A DNA stretch of 64,000 nt from Malacoraja senta (Eukaryota), in NCBI GenBank assembly GCA_038087875.1, contig JAXLNO010002421.1, positions 124,001 through 188,000 of the forward strand. Direction: 5' to 3'. The position numbers and the translations under genes were made by a program. Within the stretch, counting starts at the first letter, position 1. Each line of letters starts with the position of its first letter. Below are positions 1 to 52,461 of the stretch, piece by piece. Below the pieces are notes generated by a model. It was not told the origin of the DNA and searched no databases. It was given only the letters and a program-made list of their open reading frames with translations.

Positions 1-1438
1 ACTGCAGATGCCATGGTCTTGGCAAGTACATTTCTCAGAATAACATGATGTATCTTTAGAAAGGGATAAGGAGGAATCTCTAGAGTCAGATGGTGGTGAA
101 TCACATATTAAGTTCTTGGAGCTCTGGAAAATTATCAATCTTTGATGGGAAGAATGGATAGGGAGGCTGCTCGCTTTGCTGGAGGGTTTGAGAGTGGACA
201 AGGAATTCTATGCAACGTGCGTTTGGAATTTCAAGTGTACGGCACGTAGATGTTGTGTAATTGGCTCAATTATGCCCTTAGTGCATTGGAAAAGGTAAAC
301 AGGGTTTTCACCTATGATGACATTTTCTGCTAACTGCACTTTATCGTAAGCAAGTAGGCTGGCTTTCAGAAACAATTAGATGATTGAGGGCTCGCTTAGA
401 ATAACTGGGAAATTATGGAGCAGCCTACAAGGATATTTACAGTGTAGCTAAAGGATAAGTTAAACCTTTCTTTTCTCCGAGACATGCAAGAATAGCTCGG
501 TGCTTGATTTAATGCAGAACTTTTGAAGGACAGTTGCTGGGCCCGCAAGATCTCTATACCAGCCATCATAAATAGGAGTCTCCAATGGGCAGAAGACTGT
601 GAGACTTGATGGTATTTGCCACGGCTTCTATCATTTAACACATTGAGCTGAAAGCCATGAGATTCATTGCTTTTTTAATGCTTTATCTTGTAATTTGATG
701 TAATAAAGATAGTCATTTGTACCCCTGAAATTTTCTTTCTCCGTTCATTGATCCGAATCCTATTTATGTTTCATCACAAAGAGAGAATTGGATAAACTAA
801 TTGTGAGCAAAAACATGCAAAACTACAGTCGAAGGGCTGGGGTTAAACAAGTGATTTTCTCCAGTAGAGTGGTGGCATTGGCCTGATAGGATGAATGGTC
901 CCCATCAGCACAGTAAACATTTAAATGATCCATTGATTTGTATTCATCATCGTATATCAAATAAACTTAGGGATACGGAAGGAGAAATATTTTGGCCTGT
1001 TTATATGGTGCAAAATAACCCACCCCAGAACAATAAATAGTTGTGAATTTACACTTAATATTATCTGTCACTGAAGCAGAGTGCAGAGGTTCTCAAATTT
1101 TATTTAAGAAATCGTATTAAGGCGACTGTATAGAAAATGGTGGGTATTGCTTGGCTGCAAGATGGGAGTAGTATTGTAGTGGTAGTGATGAGGTGTTTTG
1201 ATGGCAGTGATAGTAAGATTAAACGAGAACTTACCAAGTTTGAAGTTTGATCTTTATTTTATGAGGAGTAACGTTGAGGGATTACGTGAAGAAGACCCCG
1301 TCCAGCCGCACACGCATCAATCTTTCAAAGCAGCGGAGTGACAATCACAGACGATAATTACTGAAGTATGATAGTAAGATGCATAAAGACTTAGAACTAC
1401 CAGCTTGATCCTTTTATGAGGGTGGGAGCGAAGGGCAT

Positions 1439-11507: not shown

Positions 11508-11566
11508 AGGGTCTGTCCCACCAGCATGCAATTGCATGCGTCCAGCGCGACCGAACGTGGTCACTT
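11508..11566. mobile_element. Harbinger-MITE terminal stub
   Basis: tta|agggtctgtcccac... closely matches the left end of the element at 41079. Confidence 0.65.
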
Positions 11567-12320
11567 GTGTTTTTAAATGTGCTATATAAATAAAAGTGAC
11601 TTGAGTTGACATATTTCTCCAGTTTCTTTCTTCAGATTTCCTCTAATTTGTTTAGCAACCTTTTTCTTTCAATNNNNNNNNNNNNNNNNNNNNNNNNNNN
11701 NNNNNNNNNNNNNNNNNNNNNNNNNNNNNNNNNNNNNNNNNNNNNNNNNNNNNNNNNNNNNNNNNNNNNNNNNNNNNNNNNNNNNNNNNNNNNNNNNNNN
11801 NNNNNNNATTACAATAAGTGTGTATATACATATATAAACACATATATTTGTATGTATACACATATATATATACACACACACACATATATATAAAATATAT
11901 ATGAAATCCTAATATTGTGAATAAAATATCCATGAACACAATGTCGAAATATTTTTCCATTATTTCATTCTATATTAGCGTAACACAATGTAGTACATAC
12001 ATCCCTACATATTTAAATTCAGTCGATAAGTTGGTCAAATAATATGGGGACCTTCTTGCTTTTTTCGAGACATGGATTTTAAAAACTTGAATGTCTCATA
12101 ACGATACATTTGTGGGTCAGCAGTATTTTGCACCAACACCCACAATTTCAAATAATTCTAAATTGAACTTCATAAACAAGGAAAACACTTTTTATTTACA
12201 TCATTTTGTGCGCGACATATACAGGGTTGCAGTGTTTTGCATATCAGCTAATCAATAAAAGTGATGTCAAATTCAACATATTTCAAACAAAGGACAACAT
12301 TTCCAACTTATATACAATAA

Positions 12321-33822: not shown

Positions 33823-34670
33823 CTCTTGTGTAAAGTCCTTTCTGAATAATTTCCCTTATCTGTGCTGAATGCTAACCTGGTTCTGGAAGGGCAGAGTTTG
33901 GGGATAATGCAATAGATGAAGTAGTTTGCATCAAGAAGCCATTGGGATAACCTCAGTGGAAGCTTGAGAGTGATGAGTGGTGAGTATGGAATTCTCTGTC
34001 TCAGAGGGCGGTGGAGGCAGGTACTCTGGATGCTTTCAAGAGAGAGTAGATAGGGCTCTTAAAGATAGCGGAGTCAGGGGATATGGGGAGAAGGCAGGAA
34101 CGGGGTACTGATTGGGGATGATCAGCCATGATCACATTGAATGGCGGTGCTGGCTCGAAGGGCCAAATGGCCTCCTCCTGCACCTGTTGTCTACTGAACT
34201 GACTGTGGAATAAATCCATTAACGGAGCCACTCTGCTGCCGGATTCCATGTTGTCCCTGCCTTCCCTCTGGAAGCCTCCCTCCTCGTCCCCATCAGATGC
34301 CGAGTTCCCAGAGCCCTGGTTAAACCGGGCCGGCTGCTTACGGTTAAGTCTGTGAAAGCGGCCCCATCACAGACTGTGAGCAGCAGCAAAGGGTTCACTA
34401 TAGAAAGGACCATTACGCCTATTGTAGCGGGTGGGTGGCTGCTCGTTCCCTCCCCGCCCTTTACCCCACCTGCCCGTCACCTTATCTCTTGTCCCCTGAA
34501 GCAGGCAGGCAGGTCGGGCACAGTCGGAGCCGGCTCTGACATTGTTAAACTTGCAGCAGCCGCGCACCGACTCCAACACTCCTGATCTTGAGCTGAAATT
34601 CGAGCCGGTGTTCAGCCCCAGAGACTGTGTTGAGTAAATGCCCAGTGTCCGTTCCCTTGTATTTCCGCAG

Positions 34671-35578
34671 TGAATTTGGTGGCGATTGTGATCCTGTCCC
34701 GGGGAAAGTGCGGCCTCTCCACCTGCACCACTCGCTACCTGGTGGCCATGGCAGCGGCCGATCTACTGGTCCTCATCACCGAGGTCATTTTGTATCGGAT
34801 CCGAATACATTACTTTTATTGGAGTTTCCTGTCCATCACCCCTGTGTGCAGTGTTAACGATGTACTGACGTTTGCAGCTACAGACTGTTCTGTCTGGTTC
34901 ACTGTCACTTTCACCTTTGATCGCTTTGTCGCCATTTGTTGCCAGAAGCTGAAAACTAAATATTGCACCGGGAAAACTGCGGCTGTGGTTCTGGCAACAA
35001 CCGGCGTTCTGTTCTGTGTGAAAAACTTTCCCCGCTACTTCACACAGAAACCGAAATATATCATCGACAATGTCCCGTGGGGCTGTGACACGGTTGACAA
35101 TGCTTACACTGACCCCGGGTGGGTGGCATTTGACTGGATCGACGCGGTTTTAACTCCGTTCCTCCCTTTCGCTGTAATCCTGCTGCTCAACGCTCTGACA
35201 GTCCGTCACATTTTAGTGGCCAGTCGGGTCCGTAAGGGGCTGAGGGGTGAGAGCAAGGGGGAGAACCGCAGTGACCCGGAGATGGAGAGCAGGAGGAGGT
35301 CTATGGTTTTACTCTTCACCATCTCCGGCAGCTTCATCCTCCTGTGGCTGACGTTTGTTGTAAACTTCGTCTATTATCAGATCACACGAATTGGAACTAA
35401 TCTGAATGAATCTCAATATATCTTTCACTACGTCGGGTATTTGCTGAGGAATCTCAGCTGCTGCACCAACACATTTATTTACGCGGTGACCCAGTCCAAG
35501 TTCAGGGAGCAGCTGAAGAGCACGGTGAAATATCCGCTCACCTCAGTGCTTCTGCTCATGAATAAATCCCCGCCCTGA
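34671..35578 (+). CDS. Class A GPCR (GPR139-like family), coding exon 2; spliced protein 329 aa
   Basis: Acceptor tttccgcag; open 7TM frame: AAADLL (TM2), TFDRFVAIC (TM3), FLPF (TM5), SCCTNTFIY (TM7); TGA at 35576-35578. Confidence 0.92.
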
Positions 35579-35879: not shown

Positions 35880-37310
35880 CCCTCCGCCTCTCTCTCCCTC
35901 CCTCNNNNNNNNNNNNNNNNNNNNNNNNNNNNNNNNNNNNNNNNNNNNNNNNNNNNNNNNNNNNNNNNNNNNNNNNNNNNNNNNNNNNNNNNNNNNNNNN
36001 NNNNNNNNNNNNNNNNNNNNNNNNNNNNNNNNNNNNNNNNNNNNNNNNNNNNNNNNNNGGAGAGAGTTAGAGAGCGAGAGAGAAAAGCAGAGAGGGAGGG
36101 AGGGGGGAGAGAGTGAGAGAGAGGGGGGAGGAGAGAGGGGGAGAGAGGAGGAGAGAAACACACACACACACAGAGGGAGAGAGAGATAGAGAGAGGGAGA
36201 GGGAGAGGGAGAGAGAAAGAAACAGAGAGAGTGAGACAAAGAGAGAGGGAGAAGGAGAGATAGACATAGAGAGAGACAGAGAGAGAGACAGAGGAGAGAG
36301 AGAGAGGAGAGGGAGAGAGAAACACAGAGCGAGAGAGCCTCTCAACATCTCTCCCCCGCTCTCTCACCCTGTCCCTCTCTCTCTCTCCCCCTCACTCTCT
36401 CTCTCTCTGTCTCTCTCTCTCTCTTGTCCGCATTGGAGAGGGGAGTNNNNNNNNNNNNNNNNNNNNNNNNNNNNNNNNNNNNNNNNNNNNNNNNNNNNNN
36501 NNNNNNNNNNNNNNNNNNNNNNNNNNNNNNNNNNNNNNNNNNNNNNNNNNNNNNNNNNNNNNNNNNNNNNNNNNNGTAGAGAGGGAGGGGGATAGAGGAG
36601 CAAAAGAGAGAGGAGCGGGAGATTGGGAGGGGAGAGAGTAGGGGGAGAGGAATGGGGAGAGGAGGTGGGAGGGAAGAGGGGGAGTGGGGGGAGAGGAGGG
36701 GGAGAGAGCAGCGAGGAAAGTGGAGGGGGAGAGAGGAGGTGGGGGGAGGGGGGAGCGAGGAGGGTGGGAGAGAGGAGGGGGAGAGAGAGAAGGGGCAGAG
36801 AGGGGGGAGAGAGTGGGAGGAGGGAGGGGAGAGAGGGTTGAGAGAGGAGGATGAGAGGGGGAGAGAAGGAGGGATGAGAGAGGGGTAGAGAGACGGGGAA
36901 GGGGAAGGGGAGGGGGAGAGGGAGAGGGGTGACAGGGGGAGGTGAGAAAGTGGGAGAGGGAGGGGGAGAGGGAGGTGATGGGGGAGTTAGAGAGGGGAGG
37001 GGGAGGCAATGGGGGGCGGTAGCGAGAGGTAGAGGAGGGTTCAAGGGAGGAGGGGGTGGGGAGAGGGGAGAGTTAGAGAGGGGAAGAGANNNNNNNNNNN
37101 NNNNNNNNNNNNNNNNNNNNNNNNNNNNNNNNNNNNNNNNNNNNNNNNNNNNNNNNNNNNNNNNNNNNNNNNNNNNNNNNNNNNNNNNNNNNNNNNNNNN
37201 NNNNNNNNNNNNNNNNNNNNNNNNNNNNNNNNNNNNNNNNNNNNNNNNNNNNNNNNNNNNNNNNNNNNNNNNNNNNNNNNNNNNNNNNNNNNNNNNNGAG
37301 ATGGAGAGAG
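35880..37310. repeat. Purine/pyrimidine-rich low-complexity tract with three N gaps
   Basis: (GA)n and GGGA-rich sequence between gaps. Confidence 0.9.
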
Positions 37311-41078: not shown

Positions 41079-43669
41079 AGGGCCTGTCCCACGAGCATGC
41101 GACTGCATGCGGCTAGTGCGACCTAACGTGGTCACGCTAGCCGTGCGGCCTCGCAGGGCCGTTGCTACTTCGATCGCCGGAGCCGTATGGAGTTGTGCGG
41201 AGCTGGTCCCGACATCGCACGGGGCTCCGTAAAACTGACAGTGTTCAAAAATTCCGCGCGTCAACGGCCTGCCGGCCCGCTGCTGCATTGAGGCCGCACG
41301 CACCGCCTCAACGCCGCACGCACCACCACGACGCCACAAGCACCGCCTCGACGCCACAAGCGCCGCCTCGACGCCACACGCACCGCCTCAACGCCGCACG
41401 CACCACCATGACGCCACAAGCACCGCCTCGACGCCACAAGCACCGCCTCGACGCCACACGTCAGTGTCTTGACGCCGTGGTGTTAGGTAAATTGAATGGA
41501 TTAAATGCCGATAAATCCCCAGGGCCAGATAGGCTGCATCCCAGAGTGCTTAAGGAAGTAGCCCCAGAAATAGTGGATGCATTAGTGATAATTTTTCTAA
41601 ACTCTTTAGATTCTGCAGTAGTTCCTGAGAATTGGAGGGTAGCTAATGTAACCCCCCTTTTTAAAAAGGGAGGGAGAGAGAAAGCGGGGAATTACAGACC
41701 AGTTAGTCTAACATCGGTAGTGGGGAAACTGCTAGAGTCAGTTATTAAAGATGGGATAGCAGCACATTTGGAAAGTGGTGAATCTTATGGAATTTTTCGA
41801 GGATGTAACTGGTAGAGTGGATAAGGGAGAACCAGTGGATGTGTTATATCTGGACTTTCAGAAGGCTTTCGACAAGGTCCCACATAAGAGATTAGTATAC
41901 AAACTTAAAGCACACGGTATTGGGGGTTCAGTATTTATGTGGATAGAGAACTGGCTGGCAGAGAGGAAGCAAAGAGTAGGAGTAAACGGGTCCTTTTCAG
42001 AATGGCAGGCTCTACTAGTGGGGTACCGCAAGGCTCAGTGCTGGGACCCCAGCTATTTACAATATATATTATTGATTTGGATGAGGGAATTGAATGCAAC
42101 ATCTCCAAGTTTGCGGATGACACAAAGCTGGGGGGCAGTGTTAGCTGTGAGGAGGATGCTAGGAGGCTGCAAGGTGACTTGGATGGGCTGGGTGAGTGGG
42201 CAAATGCATGGCAGATGCAGTATAATGTGGATAAATGTGAGGTTATCCACTTTGGTGGCAAAAACAGGAAAGAAGACTATTATCTAAATGGTGGCCAATT
42301 AGGAAAAGGGTAGATGCAACGACACCTGTGTGTCATGGTACACCAGTCATTGAAAGTAGGCATGCAGGTGCAGCAGGCAGTGAAGAAAGCAAATGGTATG
42401 TTAGCATCATAGCAAAAGGATTTGAGTATAGGAGCAGGGAGGTTCTACTGCAGTTGTACAGGGCCTTGATGAGAGCACACCTGGAGTATTGTGTACAGTT
42501 TTGGTCTCCTAATCTGAGGAAAGACATTCTTGCCATAGAGGGAGTAGAGAGAAGGTTCACCAGACTGATTCCTGGGATGTCAGGACTTTCATATGAAGAA
42601 AGACTGGATAGACTCGGCTTGTACTCGCTAGAATTTAGAAGATTGAGGGGGGATCTTATAGAAACGTACAAAATTCTTAAGGGGTTGGACAGGCTAGATG
42701 TAGGAAGATTGTCCCCGATGTTGGGGAAGTCCAGAACAAGGGGTCACAGTTAAGGATAAGGGGGAAATCTTTTAGGAAATCATTTTTTACACAGAGAGTG
42801 GTGAATCTGTGGAACTCTCTGCCACAGAATGTAGTTGAGGCCAGTTCATTGGCTATATTCAAGAGGGAGTTAGATGTGGCCCTTGTGGCTAAAGGGATCA
42901 GGGGGTATGGAGAGAAGGCAGGTACAGGATACTGAGTTGGATGATCAGCCGTGATCATATTGAATGGCGGTGCAGGCTCGAAGGGCCGAATGGCCTACTC
43001 CTGCACCTATTGTCTATGTTTCTATGTACGCAGCGTCTTGATGCCGAACGCAGCGTCTTGACATCACAGCCCGACGCCGTGCTACGTCCAGATTCAGTCG
43101 GCCCGCCTCCTGCCCAGCTGATTGGTGAGTTTGATGTAGGGACCGGACCGGCCCCGCACAACTCCACGCGGCCCCGCACAACTCCACGCGGCCCTGCACT
43201 GCACAACTCCACGCGGCCCCGCACAACTCCACGCGGCCCCGCACAACTCCACGCGGCCCCGCACAACTCCACGCGGCCCCGCACAACTCCACACGGCCCC
43301 GCGGTTGGAAGTGGGACCAGCCCCGCACAACTCCACGCGGCCCCGCACAACTCCACACGGCCCCGCACAACCCCGCGGTTGGAAGTGGGACGGCCCCGCA
43401 CAACTCCACACGGCCCCGCGGTTGGAAGTGGGACCGGCCCCGCACAACTCCACACGGCCCCGCACAACTCCACACGGCCCCGCGGTTGGAAGTGGGACCG
43501 GCCCCGCACAACTCCACACGGCCCCGCGGTTGGTAGTGGGACCGGCCCCGCACAACTCCACACGGCCCCGCGGTTGGAAGTGGGACCGGCCCCGCGCGGC
43601 CGTACGCCTCAAGTCACCACGTTAGGTCACGCAAGACGCGTGCAGACGCATGCTGGTGGGACGGGCCCT
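41079..43669. mobile_element. PIF/Harbinger non-autonomous element carrying a nested CR1
   Basis: 14-bp TIR agggcc(t/c)gtcccac at 41079-41092 and 43656-43669; TTA duplication both sides; internal 21-bp (41290-41460) and 20-bp (43150-43590) GC-rich tandems. Confidence 0.85.
41478..43026 (+). mobile_element. CR1 LINE, 5'-truncated, inserted in the Harbinger element
   Basis: KSPGPDRLHPRVLKE, YRPVSLTS, DFQKAFDKV, FADD; ends ctatgtttctatg. Confidence 0.92.
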
Positions 43670-43691
43670 TTAGTTTTATCTTTCTACTCAC

Positions 43692-43829
43692 CTTTATATG
43701 CCGCAAGTTTAGAAACATCAATGCCAGTGCCAGCAACGCCACAATCAGGAATCGTCCGACATTAGTGTTTATTTTTGTAGCTTGTTTGTCCATGTTGGAG
43801 TTCCCCCACACTCCCGTGTACATCCACAA
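43692..43829 (-). CDS. Candidate exon 2 of a type II membrane protein (transmembrane exon)
   Basis: tttttttag|138 nt|gtgagt, phase 0/0, open: LWMYTGVWGNSNMDKQATKINTNVGRFLIVALLALALMFLNLRHIK. Confidence 0.45.
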
Positions 43830-45249: not shown

Positions 45250-46870
45250 CAAACAGCTGAAAGTTGTGGGAAAGTAGCTGGTTTGAAGCTGGTTGTGTGA
45301 GCCTTCAGCCTGTTGGAAGCAGTAAGAAGTGGACATGGACGATGACAGATGGCACATACTTGAGATGATTCATATAGATACTTTCTATGGTGAGATGTGT
45401 TGTTCCACTGATAGATCGGGATGAGGTCACCACCCTCTACAGCCTCCTGTGTTGGAATTGCCACACAATACAATTACGCCACCAGTCAAGGTGCTTTCTC
45501 AGTATATTATGCTGAATCTCTTTAAACCAAAGAAAGTTTAAGGTGATCAGAGAGTGAGACAAAATTGACTTTTCAGGTCAAGGACTCTTCATTGGAATGG
45601 AAAAAAAAAAGAAACCAATTTTAAAAGTCTCTTTCCCAAAGAACATCTTGAAAGGGGCTGCACAATGGATTGATCACCCTTAAAGATGGCCACAATCTCT
45701 TTCAAGTGATTGCTGGGATCAGCGCCAGACTTAATGATACAGTTAAAAGATATCTAGTTGTGTAAGAGAGTACAGAGGTTATGCCATTTTATGTCAAAAT
45801 AATAAATTAGTCAAATTCAGATTAGTTAATGGTTATATATATATAGGTTGCAATTCATTTCCTTATTCAGATGAAGTTTACACAGCAAGCAGGAAATGGC
45901 AATGATAGATACACCTATAAATACAACAACAAATGCAAATCAGCAGAATCGAATACAATACATTTTATTGTCATTGCACAGCAACTGTACAACGAAATGT
46001 CAGTGCATCTCCTTCAGTTGTATACAATAAAAGACAGGATAAAAAGATTTAAAAGTACAAAAACACATTAACTCTCATATTACCAGCAAGACCTCAGGAA
46101 ATATAGCCGCTGCTGTGACTTCTTTACAAGAGTGATGGTGTTCACTGTCCATGCGAGGTCCTGGGAGATGTATGTACCCAGGAACTTAAAGCCAGTGACT
46201 CTCTCCACCATGTCTCCTTTGATGTAAAGAGGAGCAGGTTCTTCTCTCCTCCTCCTGAAGTCAATAACCAGTTCTTTTGTTTTGGTTGAGTTGAGTACCA
46301 GGTTATTGTTAGTGCACCAGACAGTCAGTTTTTGGACTTCATCTCTGTAGGCAGACTCGTCGTTGTTATTTATCAGCCCCACCACAGTCGTGTCATCTGC
46401 AAACTTAATGATCCGGTTTGTGCTCTGTGTTGGTGTGCAGTCATGGGTGTATATTGTTTAGAGAATAGGACTCAGCACACAACCTTGTGGCGCTCCTGTG
46501 CTGAGCGGCAGGACTGGGGAGTGATTGGACCCCATCCTGACAGTCTGTGGGCGATCTGTTAATAAGTCCTTGATCCATCTGCATGTGTTGGCATTTACAC
46601 CCAGTTTGTCCACCATTCTGCTGGGGATGATGGTATTGAATGCAGAACTAAAATCTACAAACAACATCCTCACATATGAGCTGGGGCGCTCCAGGTGAGT
46701 CAGTGCAGAATGTAGAGCTATGTTGATGGCGTCCTCTGTTGACCTGTTAGCTCTGTATGCAAACTGATGCTGATCCAGGGTGGATGGGAGTGAGGATTTA
46801 ATGTGGGCCAGGACCAGCCTCTCAAAACACTTCATCACAGTTGAAGTAAGAGCAACAGTTGAAGTAAGAG
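45250..46870 (-). mobile_element. Rex1/Babar RT fragments (45250-45480 and 46075-46870)
   Basis: MKCFERLVL, QFAYRANRSTEDA, FVDFSSAFNTI, PQGCVLSP, KTKELVIDFRR. Confidence 0.85.
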
Positions 46871-46904
46871 CAACAGGATACCAAGTTAAACTAAGGCAAC
46901 ACAG

Positions 46905-47160
46905 AGGCACTGTGATAGAGTGGCTGTCTTACAGCATTAGAGACCCGGGTTCGATCCTGACTAGAGTGCTGTCTGGATGGAGTTTGTACGTTCTCTCTGT
47001 CACCCTGTGGGTTTTCTCTGGGGGCTCCGGTTTCCTCCCAAATACAAAAGACGTGCAGGTTTGTAGGTTAATTTGCTTCTGTAAATTGTCCCTAGCTTGA
47101 AGGACAGAAATAGTGAATGGACAATTGCTGGTCCGTGTGGACTCAGTGGCCCAAAGTTCC
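46905..47160 (+). mobile_element. tRNA-derived SINE
   Basis: Pol III B-box ggttcgatcc at 46948-46957, followed by a SINE body (ccggtttcctccca). Confidence 0.75.
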
Positions 47161-47499
47161 TGTTTCCATACTCTATCTCTAAACTAAACCAAAACTAATC
47201 TCCACTGCCTGCATGTGATCCATATCCTTGTATTCCCTGCATACCCACGAGCCTGTCCAAAACCTTCTTAAGCACCATTATCATGTCCTCCTCTACCACC
47301 ACTCCTGGTAGCGCATTCTAGGTATCAAGCTCTCTCTGTGAAAAAAACACTTGACCTGCACATCTCGTGTAAATTTTGCCCTTCGAAGCTTAACGCTGTG
47401 CTCTTTTGAAATGTGTGATAGACATGCAATCCCATTAGGGGCTGTCAACTGTGGTCAATAAAATCCATGGTTAACTACTATGAAAGACATCAATTACAC

Positions 47500-47765
47500 T
47501 TTCTCCCTGTCAAACAGGGATGTAATGCTGAGGTTCTATAAGGCGCCAGTCAAACCACATTTGGAGCATTGTGAGCAATTTTGGGCACCATATCTGAGGA
47601 AGGATGTGCTGGCTCTAGAGAGGGTCCAGAGGAGGTGTACAAGAATGATCCCAGGAATGAATGGGTTAACATATGATGACCATTTGATGGCAGTGGGCCT
47701 GTACTTGCTGGAGTTTAGAAGAATAAAGGGGGGACCTCATTGAATCATACAAAATAGTGAAAGTC
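47500..47765 (+). mobile_element. CR1 fragment
   Basis: QFWAPYLRKDVLALERVQRR. Confidence 0.75.
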
Positions 47766-47789
47766 TGTTTGCCTTTTGAAATTGGTTTG

Positions 47790-49135
47790 ATTATGTTTTC
47801 TCCCACAAAATTGCTTTAAAAAACCTATAGTGAAAATCCTATAATATATAGTGGTATACGAATTTGGAAACAATTAAAAAAGACTTTAAAATTGGATAAT
47901 TTATCACTCTCTCCCCATTATAAACAACCCTTTATTCAAACCCTCCATGTTGGATAAAGGCTTTACACAATGGAAAAATTATGGAATTAAAAAGATTGGT
48001 CATCTTTATAGGAAAGGCACTTTTCTTTCATTTCAGGAGTTACAACAGATTTACGGACTACACTCAAATAACTTTTTCAGATATTTACAACTTAAAGATT
48101 ACATTAAATCAAATACACAAGATTACAGAACTAGGGAACCAGAAATCCTTGATGAATGTTTGAATAAACATCCTAATACAGAAAATTTAATATCTCATAT
48201 TTATAATACCCTCTTAGATAGTGAGGTCTCGCCGACGGATTTATATAGACACACATGGGAAAATGAATTAGGCCAACCATAACGAAAGATATTTGGGACG
48301 AAAGTCTACAATATATACATCAATGCTCGTTAAATGCCAGACATGCCTTAATACAATTTAAAGTATTACATAGATTACATTATTCTTAAACAAAATTAAA
48401 TAGAATCTTCCCACATATCTCTCCTATTTGTGATAAATGCCAGCATTTAGAGGCTAACTTAACTCATACCTTTGTAAATTGTATAAAAATCAAAAATTTC
48501 TGGAAGGACATTTTCAGAATAATTTCTGAAGTAGTCAATACCCAATTGGATCCCGACTAAAAACTAATAATATTAGGAATGTCAGAACAAAGCCTAAGAC
48601 TTCCAATAAACCAAAGAAACTTTCTTGATTATAGTATAATAATTGGGAAAAAATTAATATTAAAATTTTGGAAAGGTCCTATAACCCCCACAATCAAAAT
48701 GTGGATTATGGAAATGTCAGAGACCTTACATTTGGAAAGAACTAGACTTGTCTTAATTGACAAACTTGAATTATTTAATAGAATAAGGTCTCTATTTATT
48801 GATTTTTTGAAAGGGTAAATTGGTTCAGCATGGGAATCTGACTGAAATCCAAGCTCAGGATTAGATGAATAGTTATGCTTTATAACTTACGGACCTATCT
48901 CCAAAGTTGTATTATTGGTAAATTATTCCATTCTTCTTTATCATGCCTTTTTTTAAATTTCTCACTTTCTATCTATAAAACAAAACTAAATAGAAGCAGA
49001 TTTAATATACAATTGATAAAGGAGGACCACTATTATTTTGATAGCTGGATTCCCACCTATTAGCAAAGTAGGATTGATATATAAGAAATGTTTGTATTAT
49101 GATATGCACATGCTTCTAATAAAAATATATATTTT
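47790..49135 (+). mobile_element. L1/Tx1 3' fragment
   Basis: NNPLFKPS, QFKVLHRLHY, CDKC...HTF, KKLILKFWK; AATAAA and A-rich end; homologous to 62240-63200. Confidence 0.88.
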
Positions 49136-49139
49136 TTTT

Positions 49140-49490
49140 AAAACAAATAGTGAAAGGCTTGGATAGATGTGGATGTGGAGAGGATGTCTCCAATGGTGGG
49201 AGAGTCTACGACGAGAGGTCATAGTCTCAATATTAAAGGACATTCCTTTAGGAAAGAGATGAGGAGGAATTTATTTTGTCAGAGGGTGGTGATTCTGTGG
49301 AATTATTTGCCACAGAAGGCTGTGGAGTCCGTCAATGGATATTTTTAATTCTTGATTAGTATGCAGGTCAGGGGTTATGGGGAGAAGGCAGGAGAATGGG
49401 GTTAGGAGGGAGAGATAGATCAGCCATGATTGACTGGCGAAGTCGACTTGATGGGCCGAATGTTCTAATGCTGCAGCCATCACTTATGAC
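49140..49490 (+). mobile_element. CR1 3'-end fragment
   Basis: gaggaggaatttattttgtcagagggtggtg and CR1 3' UTR. Confidence 0.7.
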
Positions 49491-49783
49491 CTTATGACTC
49501 AGTTGGCTTCCTCCATGTGCTCCAGTTTTGACCAATATACCAAAGACGTGCCAGTGAGTTAGTTGGACATTGCAAATTATCCGTCGTGGAGCTGAATGCA
49601 AGGAGAATCCAAGGGAGCTGAGTGCAAGTTGTGAGAGAGAGCTGTGGAAGTTTGTCGACATTGCGTAGAAAACTAGCATAGAATCAATGGGCCGAATGAC
49701 CTTTCCCTCTGTCATGATTGGGTCAGAGATAATATTACTCATTGCCTACCATTGCAAAACAACATCCTTTGTTCTGAACTCAC

Positions 49784-50059
49784 CTTTTCTGGTCAGGAAT
49801 GTCTTTCCAATTGCATAGTATGTAAGCCATAGATCCACACAGTCATGTTCTAACAAGCTCTTGAAATAACGGTTCATTTTTTCATTCTTGTCCCATTTCT
49901 CTTTGAAGGGCTCAGCTATTGGATCATGCACCGTCCACTTTAGCTTGTCCTTATCAAAACTAAATGCATAACTTCCATCAAAAGCCAACTTCAATATCCC
50001 TACAGTGGGACTGTGATCGTTCACCTCACAACCAAACTGTCCTTGAACGTAGTGATAAT
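49784..50059 (-). CDS. MHC class I-like alpha2-domain exon (non-classical); partner exons not found
   Basis: tttcag|276 nt|gtgagt, phase 1/1, open: HYVQGQFGCEV...AFDG...W...KEKWD...CVDL..TY...GK..L.RK; both disulfide cysteines present. Confidence 0.88.
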
Positions 50060-50224
50060 CTGAAATAAAAATAAAAATAATTATTTGATTAATTGTTATG
50101 ACTGGGTAATTTCTGAACACCAGGGTCCAAGTCATTTATATATGTCACAACTAGCAAGGGTCACAGCACAGATCCCTGCAGAACTCTACTTGTCACTGAA
50201 CTACAGCCTGAATATTTGTCTTTC

Positions 50225-50680
50225 CGTGCAACTGTAGAGACCATATTATTGTATGGGTGTGAGGCATGGACTCTCACTCCAGCACTGTCCTAGACTCTCG
50301 ATGGTACCTACACCCGAATGCTCGGAAAAGTTCAAAATGCAGATGGAGGGACCACATCACGAACGCCCAGCTCTATGGGGAGAATCCACCTCTGACCGAG
50401 AAGATCACGTTGAGAAGGATGAGGCTCGCAGGTCTCTGGCTCCGCCACCCAGAAATGCCAGCAAACAAGGTTGTGCTGTGGGAACCCACCCATGGAAGAC
50501 TTGACCCAGGATGGCCAATCAAGACGATGGTGAAGACGTTGATGGAAGACGCATGTGTAGAGATAAACGAGGCGCCTGCCAGCTGCATGGAGGACAGAGA
50601 TGTGTGGTGCGTCCGTCACCGTGCCCATCGGAAACCAGCACGGCACTAATGTTTTCAACGATTATTATTATCATCCACTA
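50225..50680 (+). mobile_element. RTE-clade LINE 3' fragment
   Basis: LLYGCEAWTLT, WRDHITNAQLY, RRMRLAG, MEDRDVW; (TAT)n-like tail. Confidence 0.8.
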
Positions 50681-50794
50681 CACCCCTCTGTCCTGGGGAT
50701 TTATCCACATTTCTCTTCAAGTGATCCAACATCTCCTTCTTGCTTAACTTCAAAGTGTCCCTGCATGTTAGCATTCTTCACATTGATTCTCCAT

Positions 50795-51545
50795 GTGTAA
50801 GAAAGAACTGCAGATGCTGCAGATGTTAAAATCGAAGAGAGACACAAAATGCTGGCGTAACTCAGCGGGTCAGGCAGCTTCTTCAGACTGATGTCAGGGG
50901 AGGGACAAAGATAGAATGTCGGCGGAGACAGTAAGACTGGTGGCAGAATTGGGAAGGGGGAGGGGATGGAGAGAGAAATCAAGGGCTATCGAAAGTATTA
51001 GAAGTCAATGCTCATACCGCTGGAGTATAGACTATCCAAGCGAAATATGAGGTGCTGTTCCTCCAATTTGGGCTGGGCCTCACTCTGACAATGGAGGAGG
51101 CCCAGGACAGAAAGGTCAGATTGGGAATGGGAGGGGAGTTGAAGTGCTGAGCCACCGGGAGATCGGGTAGGGTAAGACGGACTGAGCGGAAGTGTTCAGC
51201 AAAACGATCGCCGCGCCTGCGCTTGGTCTCACTGATGTAGAGAAGTTGACAACTGAAACAGCGGATACAGTACATGAGGTTGGAAGAGGTGCAAGTGAAC
51301 TTCTGCCTCACCTGGAAAGACTTTAGGTCCTTGGATGGAGTCGAGGGGGGACGTAAAGGGACAGGTGTTGCATCTCCTGCGGTTGCAGGGGAAAGTATCC
51401 GGGGAGCGGGTGGTTTGGGTGTGAAGGGACGAGTTGACCAGGGAGTTTCGGAGGGAAAGGTCTCTGCGGAAAGCAGAAAGGGGTGGAGATGGGAAGATGT
51501 GACCAGTAGTGGGATCCCATTGGAGGTGGCAGAAATGTTGGAGGA
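50795..51545 (-). mobile_element. Penelope-like element 3' part (GIY-YIG endonuclease remnant plus terminus)
   Basis: FTCTSSNLMYCIRC..C.LLYI.ETKR..GDRF.EH...VAQHFNS; terminal repeat at 50795-50900. Confidence 0.85.
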
Positions 51546-51849
51546 TTTTATGATGTACTTACTATTAATGGTCCTTACTATTCTACATGTCTTCCTTGGT
51601 GAAACCAAACCTCGCCTATATCCACAAACCAAGCACATATTCCCTTCTATATCCTTAAGCAATCCACCTTTTGCTGCAATGGTTGCCTCGCCAACAGTAT
51701 GTCTGTCCCTTCCTTCTTTGTGTCCATTTTGTACGTGTTAAATGTATATTCTTCAGTGTTCTTAAGCTTGTTTTTTGGGCGGGGGGGGGGGGGGTGGGGG
51801 AGTTGTGGGAAACTTTTCCTAATCTCTTACCTCGACGTTGATGCGATAT

Positions 51850-52375
51850 TTTCTGTATCGTATCTCCGTCCACAATGCGGCCTAACATTGAGGAATGGCG
51901 GCCTTTGCTAGAGATCGACCGGGAGATCCATCGCAGGAGCCTGTGGACTTACCATCATGGAGCTCGCAATCCTTGTCAGGGATCGACTTTAGAGCTCCAA
52001 CTGTGAGAGCCTGCAAGACTTTAACATCGCGGAGCCTGCGGTCCTCGGTCGAGACCGACATCCGGGATCTCCAAGCCGCAGGAGTTTCGACCGCTCCGAC
52101 CGCTCCGATGTGGGAGTTTCGATTCCCCAACGGGGGTTTCGACCACCGACTGCAGATTATTTGACTGCCCAGACCGCGGGAGATAAAGAGGAAGGAGATT
52201 AGACTTTATTGCCTTCTATCACAGTGAGGAACGTGCGGGCTCCTCTGTTGTGGATGTTTATGTTAACTTTTACGTTATTGTGTGTCTTGTTGCTTTTTTT
52301 TTGTATGGTGTATGGTAGTCTGCATTTCAATGTACCTTAATTGGTATATGTGACAACAAACTAACCATGAAACCT
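51850..52375 (+). mobile_element. SINE-like repeat with a Rex1-type tail (related copy about 55400-55790)
   Basis: Shared ...cacagtga(g/a)gaa...gtggatgttt...gtga(c/t)(a/g)a(c/t)aaa end in both copies. Confidence 0.5.
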
Positions 52376-52461
52376 TGAAAAAGATGTGGGATTTTCTGTA
52401 ATCTGACTTACTAAAGCCACTTTGTGGCCTTTATTAGCCCCTTAAGTTTTAAGCTTTAGAG

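What the first reader, a model, noticed from the sequence alone, without database searches (positions are those of the whole stretch)
49784..50059. Orphan non-classical MHC class I alpha2 exon
It has the canonical 276-nt length, phase 1/1 and the C101-C164 pair. By eye against HLA-A2, K146, W147 and Y171 are kept, but Y123>A, T143>F, Y159>L and W167>L. That removes classical peptide-terminus anchors and makes the groove more hydrophobic, suggesting a non-peptide or lipid ligand (inference). The frame and splice sites are intact among dense TE debris, yet I found no alpha1 exon in 14 kb upstream or alpha3 exon downstream. It may be a divergent lineage, a shuffled exon or a recent pseudogene.
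Basis: partly seen in the sequence, partly recalled or inferred. Interest (0 to 1): 0.7.

Follow-up and report, generated by a model that had tools for sequence, protein, structure and literature searches.

The report
Stray exon of skate UGA gene
This is a real, undamaged second-domain exon from a skate copy of UGA, a recently described shark-and-ray MHC class I gene thought to bind lipids as CD1 does. The rest of the gene is not where it should be, so this copy is most likely a broken remnant and not a new kind of immune gene.

Summary
The exon is real. It lies on the minus strand (50059 to 49784) and is 276 nt long, open, phase 1/1, with AG/GT borders identical to those of annotated orthologues.

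It is not a new lineage. Its closest relatives are annotated skate class I genes (86/91 residues with Amblyraja radiata, 84/91 with Leucoraja erinacea). Its closest solved structure is PDB 9CH4, "shark nonclassical MHC class I, UGA". UGA is one of two elasmobranch CD1-like lineages reported to bind lipids.

Only about 5.6 kb around the exon is homologous to reference UGA-type genes. That homology stops at a LINE junction (about 46878) and does not resume. None of the other five exons, nor the roughly 15 kb of conserved 3' gene sequence, is in the window. An intact GPR139-like gene sits on the other strand where alpha3 should be. A piece of the gene's 3' flank lies inverted at 1-1189.

Most likely this is a truncated or rearranged UGA-type copy. 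An intact gene with giant introns, or a misassembly, is not excluded.

Earlier notes of this scan describe alpha2-less class I copies on other pieces of this genome, but not this exon.

The parts
49784..50059 (-). Alpha2-domain exon (276 nt, phase 1/1, open, AG/GT intact) of a UGA-type non-classical MHC class I gene copy
   Evidence: It matches the A. radiata exon at 266/276 nt and has the same splice borders as four annotated orthologous exons.
46881..52461 (-). The only stretch colinear with reference UGA-type genes: the exon with about 0.5 kb (Rhinoraja scale) of intron 2 and about 1.3 kb of intron 3, plus insertions specific to the window copy
   Evidence: 86-93% identity to L001, L002, L003 and L005; divergence of 8-10% from the Amblyraja and Leucoraja genes.
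47763..49143 (+). 1.4-kb repeat insertion in intron 3, present only in the window copy; I take it to be TE-derived
   Evidence: the reference coordinates are contiguous across this gap. ORF at 47890-48279, which had no Pfam match.
46083..46928 (-). LINE reverse-transcriptase fragment whose 5' end marks the point (about 46878) where homology to the gene stops
   Evidence: RVT_1, E=4.7e-14. (alignment showing the break). (the 2.4 kb that follows in the Amblyraja and Leucoraja genes is nowhere in the window).
1..1189 (+). Block homologous to the intergenic flank 5-6 kb downstream of reference UGA-type genes, in the opposite orientation to the alpha2 exon and cut by the window edge
   Evidence: 93.6% to L001 93852-95035, 92.6% to L003 81926-82794, 79% to L005 47390-47874. 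There is one copy per locus, at the same relative place.
34670..35578 (+). Intact single-exon GPR139-like receptor gene, lying where the 3' half of the class I gene would be expected
   Evidence: 7tm_1, E=1.4e-20; only 50-58% identical to the GPR139-like genes beside the reference loci.

Best explanation
The exon is the alpha2 exon of a copy of the elasmobranch UGA lineage of non-classical MHC class I genes. In an intact heavy chain this domain supplies four floor strands and one helix of the ligand groove. It is pinned by the C101-C164 disulfide. In this lineage it lacks the classical peptide-end anchors T143 and Y159, which fits the lipid-type ligands reported for UFA/UGA. The lipid function is inferred from the literature.

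This particular copy is most likely not a working gene. Only the exon and a few kb of its own introns survive, in a rearranged, transposon-filled region. The gene sequence breaks off 2.9 kb downstream of the exon, at a LINE junction. The other exons are absent from the 64 kb. A GPR139-like gene on the other strand occupies the place of alpha3, and a piece of the gene's 3' flank lies inverted at the far end.

The cause would be an inversion, or a partial inverted duplication, within a cluster of UGA and GPR139-like genes (inferred). The exon itself has not yet picked up a disabling mutation.
For: Identity of the exon:
- 9ch4_A E=2.3e-34, 54/90 identical.
- 9CH4 is titled 'shark nonclassical MHC class I, UGA'.
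- The full-length skate relative P0154 matches 9ch4 without gaps over 266 residues, E=8.6e-118. The next best hit is MR1 at 4e-48.
- The exon sits in the batoid clade with 98/98 support.
- The lineage-wide groove residues are shown.

Truncation:
- Rhinoraja, Amblyraja and Leucoraja genes are colinear at 80-85% from alpha1 to 6 kb past the last exon. The window holds only L005 29119-31245 (minus strand) and L005 46030-47874 (plus strand).
- A spliced transcript of six exons hits the window with exon 3 only.
- Homology ends at a LINE 5' junction and does not resume.
- No other class I domain is detectable.
- An intact GPR139-like gene lies 14 kb downstream on the other strand. It is not the orthologue of those beside the reference genes.
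- In the reference genes alpha3 lies 2.8 to 20 kb downstream. Here 49.7 kb lacks it.

Substitutions specific to the window copy:
- Three of the four unambiguous exon changes are non-synonymous (N18T, R29S, Y87F).
- They hit residues kept in most or all of the other batoid sequences.
Against: - The exon is fully open with perfect splice sites.
- On its own branch it changed somewhat less than the flanking introns: 4-6 changes in 276 nt against 49 in 1377 nt (Fisher p=0.09-0.36). Past or present constraint therefore cannot be excluded.
- Alpha1 could lie just beyond the window's right end.
- The sequence left of position 1 is unseen.
- Eight N runs (1,484 nt in all) are unread. Only one (280 nt) could just hold an alpha3 exon (267-282 nt in the references). 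A multi-copy repeat runs up to its low edge at 20153, and the conserved flanks of alpha3 are not found anywhere in the window.
- I could not identify the species, so I cannot say whether this is a paralogue or a rearranged orthologue.
Confidence: 0.7

Rival explanations
1. The exon belongs to an intact, functional UGA paralogue or orthologue. Its introns would be so swollen by transposons that alpha1 (more than 14 kb upstream) and alpha3 (more than 50 kb downstream) both fall outside the window, with the GPR139-like gene nested in intron 3.
For: - Reference genes of this lineage span 31 to 78 kb, with introns up to 32 kb.
- The exon is open with intact splice sites.
- The exon rate on its own branch is 0.4-0.6 times the intron rate.
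- Low-copy repeats at 28.2-30.8 kb and 55-60 kb lie in the same order as similar elements in reference introns.
Against: - Those extra anchors are only 73-87% identical, against 89-93% for the true block. They occur in more than one copy or in only one reference locus, so they look like repeat copies.
- The conserved sequence that directly follows the block in all references is absent.
- The 3' flank block is in the wrong orientation.
- Intron 3 would have to exceed 50 kb, against 2.8-20 kb elsewhere.
Confidence: 0.12
2. The picture is an assembly artefact. In a tandem array of near-identical UGA-type genes, a segment was joined or oriented wrongly through a repeat. The exon would then belong to a normal gene in the real genome.
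For: - Rhinoraja longicauda carries at least 10 near-identical copies on one chromosome.
- L. erinacea copies sit on short unplaced scaffolds, and PMC10751288 notes that many key MHC genes of A. radiata lie on unplaced scaffolds. Such regions are hard to assemble.
- The break lies exactly at a LINE/SINE junction.
Against: - There is no N run near the junction. The nearest ends at 37297.
- The block is 8-10% diverged from the known skate genes and 11% from Rhinoraja, so it is not a collapsed recent copy.
- Flipping a segment would still not bring alpha3 next to alpha2 within the window.
Confidence: 0.08
3. The exon has been captured into another transcript (exon shuffling). It would be spliced to non-MHC exons, or read through into a neighbouring gene.
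For: - The exon is phase 1/1 and therefore symmetric.
- NCBI predicts read-through isoforms joining a UGA-type chain to a GPR139-like receptor in L. erinacea (P0152).
Against: - The GPR139-like gene here is on the opposite strand.
- No protein of 50-159 aa in 5.8 billion clusters carries this exon.
- No neighbouring non-TE exon was detected on the minus strand.
- An isolated alpha2 half-groove is unlikely to fold usefully (inference).
Confidence: 0.05
4. It represents a new, divergent class I lineage.
For: It lacks several classical anchor residues.
Against: - It is 91-95% identical to the annotated skate proteins compared here: 86/91 with A. radiata, 84/91 and 83/91 with the two L. erinacea proteins. 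It is about 70% identical to shark proteins of one conserved lineage.
- All the 'odd' residues are shared by that lineage.
Confidence: 0.02

Closest known systems
UGA, elasmobranch non-classical MHC class I (PDB 9CH4, released 2026-03-18). Annotated skate relatives: XP_032898133 (A. radiata), XP_055486429 and XP_055521885 (L. erinacea), XP_078272153 and others (R. longicauda)
   Same: - Alpha2 sequence: 60% identical to 9CH4, 91-95% to the Amblyraja and Leucoraja proteins, 90% to the Rhinoraja protein P0164.
- Same exon length, phase and splice borders.
- Both cysteines present.
- Same groove signature (F143, K146, W147, L159, L167/W168, Y171).
- Neighbourhood of GPR139-like genes.
   Different: - Only the alpha2 exon and its intron flanks are present.
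- Leader, alpha1, alpha3, TM and cytoplasmic exons are missing from the window.
- Three private replacements: N18T, R29S, Y87F.
- 8-10% intron divergence from the Amblyraja and Leucoraja genes.
UFA, the second CD1-like elasmobranch lineage (named in PMC10751288 and PMC12562908). A possible example is XP_055486430 of L. erinacea, on the same 127-kb contig as the UGA-type gene.
   Same: Same general class I-like alpha2 fold and cysteine pair. A related motif appears in alpha1 of the family (YY.LNHG..LPEYS).
   Different: Only 42% identical in alpha2. Equating P0016 with UFA is my guess and was not tested.
CD1 (lipid-presenting class I-like molecules of tetrapods)
   Same: It is said to work alike: a hydrophobic groove that binds lipids (PMC12562908, reported as a personal communication). 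The classical peptide-end anchors are lost.
   Different: No closer to CD1 than to other class I by sequence. No CD1 chain is among the 60 best PDB hits for the exon. UGA is MHC-linked. Orthology to CD1 is unresolved in the literature.
MR1 and classical class I (UAA, chicken BF2, carp UAA)
   Same: These are the next best sequence relatives after UGA (E about 1e-12 for the exon). Same exon architecture.
   Different: T143 and Y159 of classical molecules are replaced. Similarity is far weaker than to UGA.

Membership tests
MHC class I heavy chain, alpha2 domain (Pfam PF00129) | Profile match above the curated threshold over the alpha2 half of the model | tested here: met
   49.7 bits against a cut-off of 28.3, model positions 93-177. 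E=1e-46 against my own profile of 86 class I chains.
MHC class I heavy chain, alpha2 domain (Pfam PF00129) | Intradomain cysteine pair (C101-C164) and a 276-nt phase 1/1 exon | tested here: met
   C10 and C73 are present, and the borders are identical to annotated orthologous exons.
UGA lineage (PDB 9CH4) | Closest to UGA, and inside its clade, rather than any other class I lineage | tested here: met
   9ch4 at 2.3e-34, next hit at 2.4e-12. P0154 against 9ch4 at 8.6e-118; entry title; batoid clade 98/98. No named UFA, UDA, UEA or UBA sequences were available for a labelled tree.
UGA lineage (PDB 9CH4) | Complete heavy-chain gene: leader, alpha1, alpha2, alpha3, TM and cytoplasmic exons in order on one strand | tested here: not met
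   only exon 3 is in the 64-kb window. What lies outside the window could not be seen.
UGA lineage (PDB 9CH4) | Expression and association with beta2-microglobulin; lipid ligand in the groove | not testable with these tools
   A transcript exists for the L. erinacea relative (L004) but none for this copy. Lipid binding is known only from PMC12562908, as a personal communication.
Classical class I (UAA-type, peptide-presenting) | Conserved peptide-terminus anchors in alpha2: T143, K146, W147, Y159, Y171 | tested here: not met
   F143 and L159 replace T and Y. K146, W147 and Y171 are kept.
CD1 | Sequence membership in the CD1 family | tested here: not met
   no CD1 chain among the 60 best PDB sequence hits. 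In the structure list, chicken CD1-1 (Z 16.9) is tied with ZAG, YF1 and classical chains, and the model was of low confidence (pLDDT 60.6).

The most novel reading that the evidence does not exclude
The exon is still in use. Either it is part of a UGA paralogue with introns of more than 14 kb and more than 50 kb that hosts a GPR139-like gene, or it is a surviving half-groove exon spliced into another transcript of the UGA/GPR139-like cluster. That would make this a diverged second UGA gene type in skates.
Probability: 0.12. Interest if true: 0.4.

Novelty: new member of a known kind. Interest (0 to 1): 0.2.

Why it matters
UGA and UFA are the candidate cartilaginous-fish counterparts of CD1. 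They bear on whether lipid presentation is as old as peptide presentation.

This window adds little to that question. It shows one more, probably dead, piece of the lineage in a skate. It also hints that UGA-type genes and GPR139-like genes duplicate and rearrange together.

The practical lesson concerns the scan. In skates these genes span 30 to 80 kb, so 'missing exons' in a 64-kb window must be judged against the intron sizes and conserved intron sequence of relatives.

Tried and rejected
1. I first favoured a whole gene with giant introns, because minus-strand blastn anchors seemed to run from 60 kb down to 8.5 kb. I rejected most of these anchors. They are 73-87% identical, and they occur twice in the window (12309-12555 plus strand and 30313-30758 minus strand) or in one reference locus only. 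The compact Rhinoraja gene shows which sequence is truly conserved.

2. A 46-nt match at 11565-11611 lies 330 bp past alpha3 in three references and next to an N run. No alpha3 or any other homology is around it, so I take it as a repeat fragment.

3. A simple inversion model predicts that 1189-46878 matches the region beyond the 3' flank of L003. It does not, and the GPR139-like gene is only 51% identical. This model is neither confirmed nor fully excluded.

4. Species identification failed. TE identities were uninformative. Searches of earlier findings gave only 'skate'.

5. A search for short proteins carrying the exon found nothing.

6. A full-text search for '9CH4' gave only false matches. 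No primary UFA/UGA paper is in the library.

7. The AlphaFold model of the A. radiata ectodomain was poor (pLDDT 60.6). I used it only to retrieve the 9CH4 title, not for groove analysis.

8. dN/dS on the exon's own branch has too few changes to be informative.

Full report
**What is there**

The stretch 49784-50059 does not code on the plus strand. On the minus strand it is a 91-codon open frame, bounded by a polypyrimidine tract with cag| and by |gtgagt. The exon is 276 nt long and phase 1/1.

I located the annotated alpha2 exons of the closest genes: Amblyraja radiata (L001), Leucoraja erinacea (L002, L003) and Rhinoraja longicauda (L005). They start and end at exactly the same bases. An RNA-seq contig (L004) splices that exon to five others in L. 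erinacea.

The match to MHC class I is far beyond chance:
- Pfam MHC_I, E=4.3e-13.
- PDB 9ch4_A, E=2.3e-34.
- P0001, E=3.7e-53 in a library of 1.84 billion proteins.

**Which family**

The exon differs at 5 of 91 residues from the A. radiata protein XP_032898133. It differs at 7 and 8 from the two L. erinacea proteins and at 9 from a Rhinoraja protein. It is about 70% identical to sawshark proteins.

The full-length skate protein aligns without gaps to PDB 9ch4 over 266 residues (E=8.6e-118). The next hit is MR1 at 4e-48. The entry is titled 'Crystal structure of shark nonclassical MHC class I, UGA', released 2026-03-18.

Two papers describe UFA and UGA:
[quoted passage not shown] It says their crystal structure and mass spectrometry suggest lipid binding, and gives this as a personal communication.
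- PMC10751288 says the same of UFA.

In a maximum-likelihood tree of alpha2 domains the exon sits inside the batoid clade (98/98), nearest A. radiata. A second L. erinacea gene on the same contig (P0016, 42% identical) may be the sister lineage. I did not test that.

**The residues**

I aligned the exon against classical class I from carp and from a teleost. The exon has F at 143, L at 159, L at 167 (W at 168) and A at 123. It keeps K146, W147 and Y171.

The same pattern is present in every member of the lineage, from cow shark to manta. It characterises UGA and not this copy. The HLA-A2 numbering is from textbook knowledge, and I did not align HLA-A2.

**Is it orphan?**

The reference genes are very long: 31 kb in Rhinoraja, 55 kb or more in L. 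erinacea and 78 kb in A. radiata. Intron 2 is 4.3-26 kb and intron 3 is 2.8-20 kb. Missing alpha1 within 14 kb is therefore uninformative.

The 3' side is informative. Rhinoraja, Amblyraja and Leucoraja are colinear at 80-85% nearly without a break, from alpha1 to about 6 kb past the last exon. Of all that sequence the window holds only two pieces:
- L005 29119-31245, at window 52461-46881 on the minus strand.
- Part of the downstream intergenic flank, at window 1-1189, in the opposite orientation and cut by the window edge.

The transcript L004 hits the window with exon 3 alone. Neither tblastn with family proteins nor a profile of 86 class I chains finds another class I domain in any frame.

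The homology ends at about 46878. That point is the 5' end of a minus-strand LINE reverse-transcriptase fragment. The 2.4 kb that follows in the Amblyraja and Leucoraja genes, and the conserved sequence upstream of alpha3, occur nowhere in the window.

Fourteen kb downstream of the exon, on the other strand, lies an intact GPR139-like receptor gene. GPR139-like genes also flank the reference loci. This one is only 50-58% identical to them, so the region is not the simple orthologue of those loci.

**Age and state**

- In the alpha2 block the window copy is 8-10% from the Amblyraja and Leucoraja genes. Those two are 2-3% apart, and all are about 11% from Rhinoraja.
- In the flank block the figures are 6.6%, 2.8% and 13%.
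- The copy therefore split from the Amblyraja/Leucoraja gene after Rhinoraja did.
- I could not identify the species. It is either an older paralogue or the rearranged orthologue in another skate.
- On its own branch the exon has 4 clear changes (up to 6) in 276 nt, against 49 in 1377 intron columns. That is lower, but not significantly so (p=0.09-0.36).
- Three of the four clear changes are replacements (N18T, R29S, Y87F). They fall at positions kept in most or all of the other batoid sequences.
- This does not settle whether the exon is still constrained.

**Verdict**

This is a genuine exon of a known, recently described lineage. It is most likely (about 0.7) a fragment left by an inversion or a partial inverted duplication in a cluster of UGA and GPR139-like genes.

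Other readings, not excluded:
- An intact gene with introns longer than the window (about 0.12).
- A misassembly in a repeated gene array (about 0.08).
- Capture of the exon into another transcript (about 0.05).

**Limits**

- Only one of them (280 nt) could just hold an alpha3 exon. A multi-copy repeat runs up to its low edge at 20153.
- The conserved flanks of alpha3 are not found anywhere in the window.
- Sequence outside the window was not available.

**Earlier notes of this scan**

Earlier notes report several class I genes on other pieces of this genome that lack the alpha2 exon. I could not compare them with this exon.

Noticed in passing
window 34670-35578 (+): Intact 302-codon GPR139-like rhodopsin-family receptor ORF (7tm_1, E=1.4e-20). 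Related genes lie beside the UGA-type genes in L. erinacea (three in L003) and Rhinoraja (one in L005). The two families seem to travel together.
   Followed up: partly
R. longicauda chromosome CM130181.1 (locus L005 and proteins P0164, P0178-P0186): At least 10 distinct, near-identical UGA-type proteins (seven of them full-length, 334 aa) are annotated on one chromosome. The 2025 review calls UFA/UGA single- or low-copy.
   Followed up: partly
L003 (L. erinacea JAMYXN010000161.1), proteins P0001, P0152, P0169: NCBI isoforms of LOC129716032 join the complete UGA-type chain to a GPR139-like receptor about 35 kb downstream. This is either read-through transcription or an annotation artefact.
   Followed up: no
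L. erinacea contig JAMYXN010000384.1 (holds L002): A second class I-like gene (P0016, XP_055486430, 'MR1-like, partial') has the accession number next to that of the UGA-type gene. It is 42% identical in alpha2 and shares the alpha1 motif YY.LNHG..LPEYS. It is a candidate for the UFA lineage.
   Followed up: no
window 12309-12555 (+) and 30313-30758 (-): Two inverted copies of a low-copy repeat that also sits once in intron 3 of each Amblyraja and Leucoraja UGA-type gene. They mimic colinearity and misled me at first.
   Followed up: yes
window 18414-19393 and 42893-43762: Long tandem arrays that read open in several frames (for example repeated ALKGMHASLAAL units). They are probably minisatellites.
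   Followed up: no
window 14178-16237 (-) and 22436-27391 (-): Large open frames on the minus strand at 14178-15278 and 15335-16237 (367 and 301 aa). By eye they look like transposase remnants. A LINE-like 974-codon ORF with an adjoining 571-codon ORF lies at 22436-27391. The left 47 kb looks dominated by mobile elements. These ORFs were not run against Pfam.
   Followed up: no
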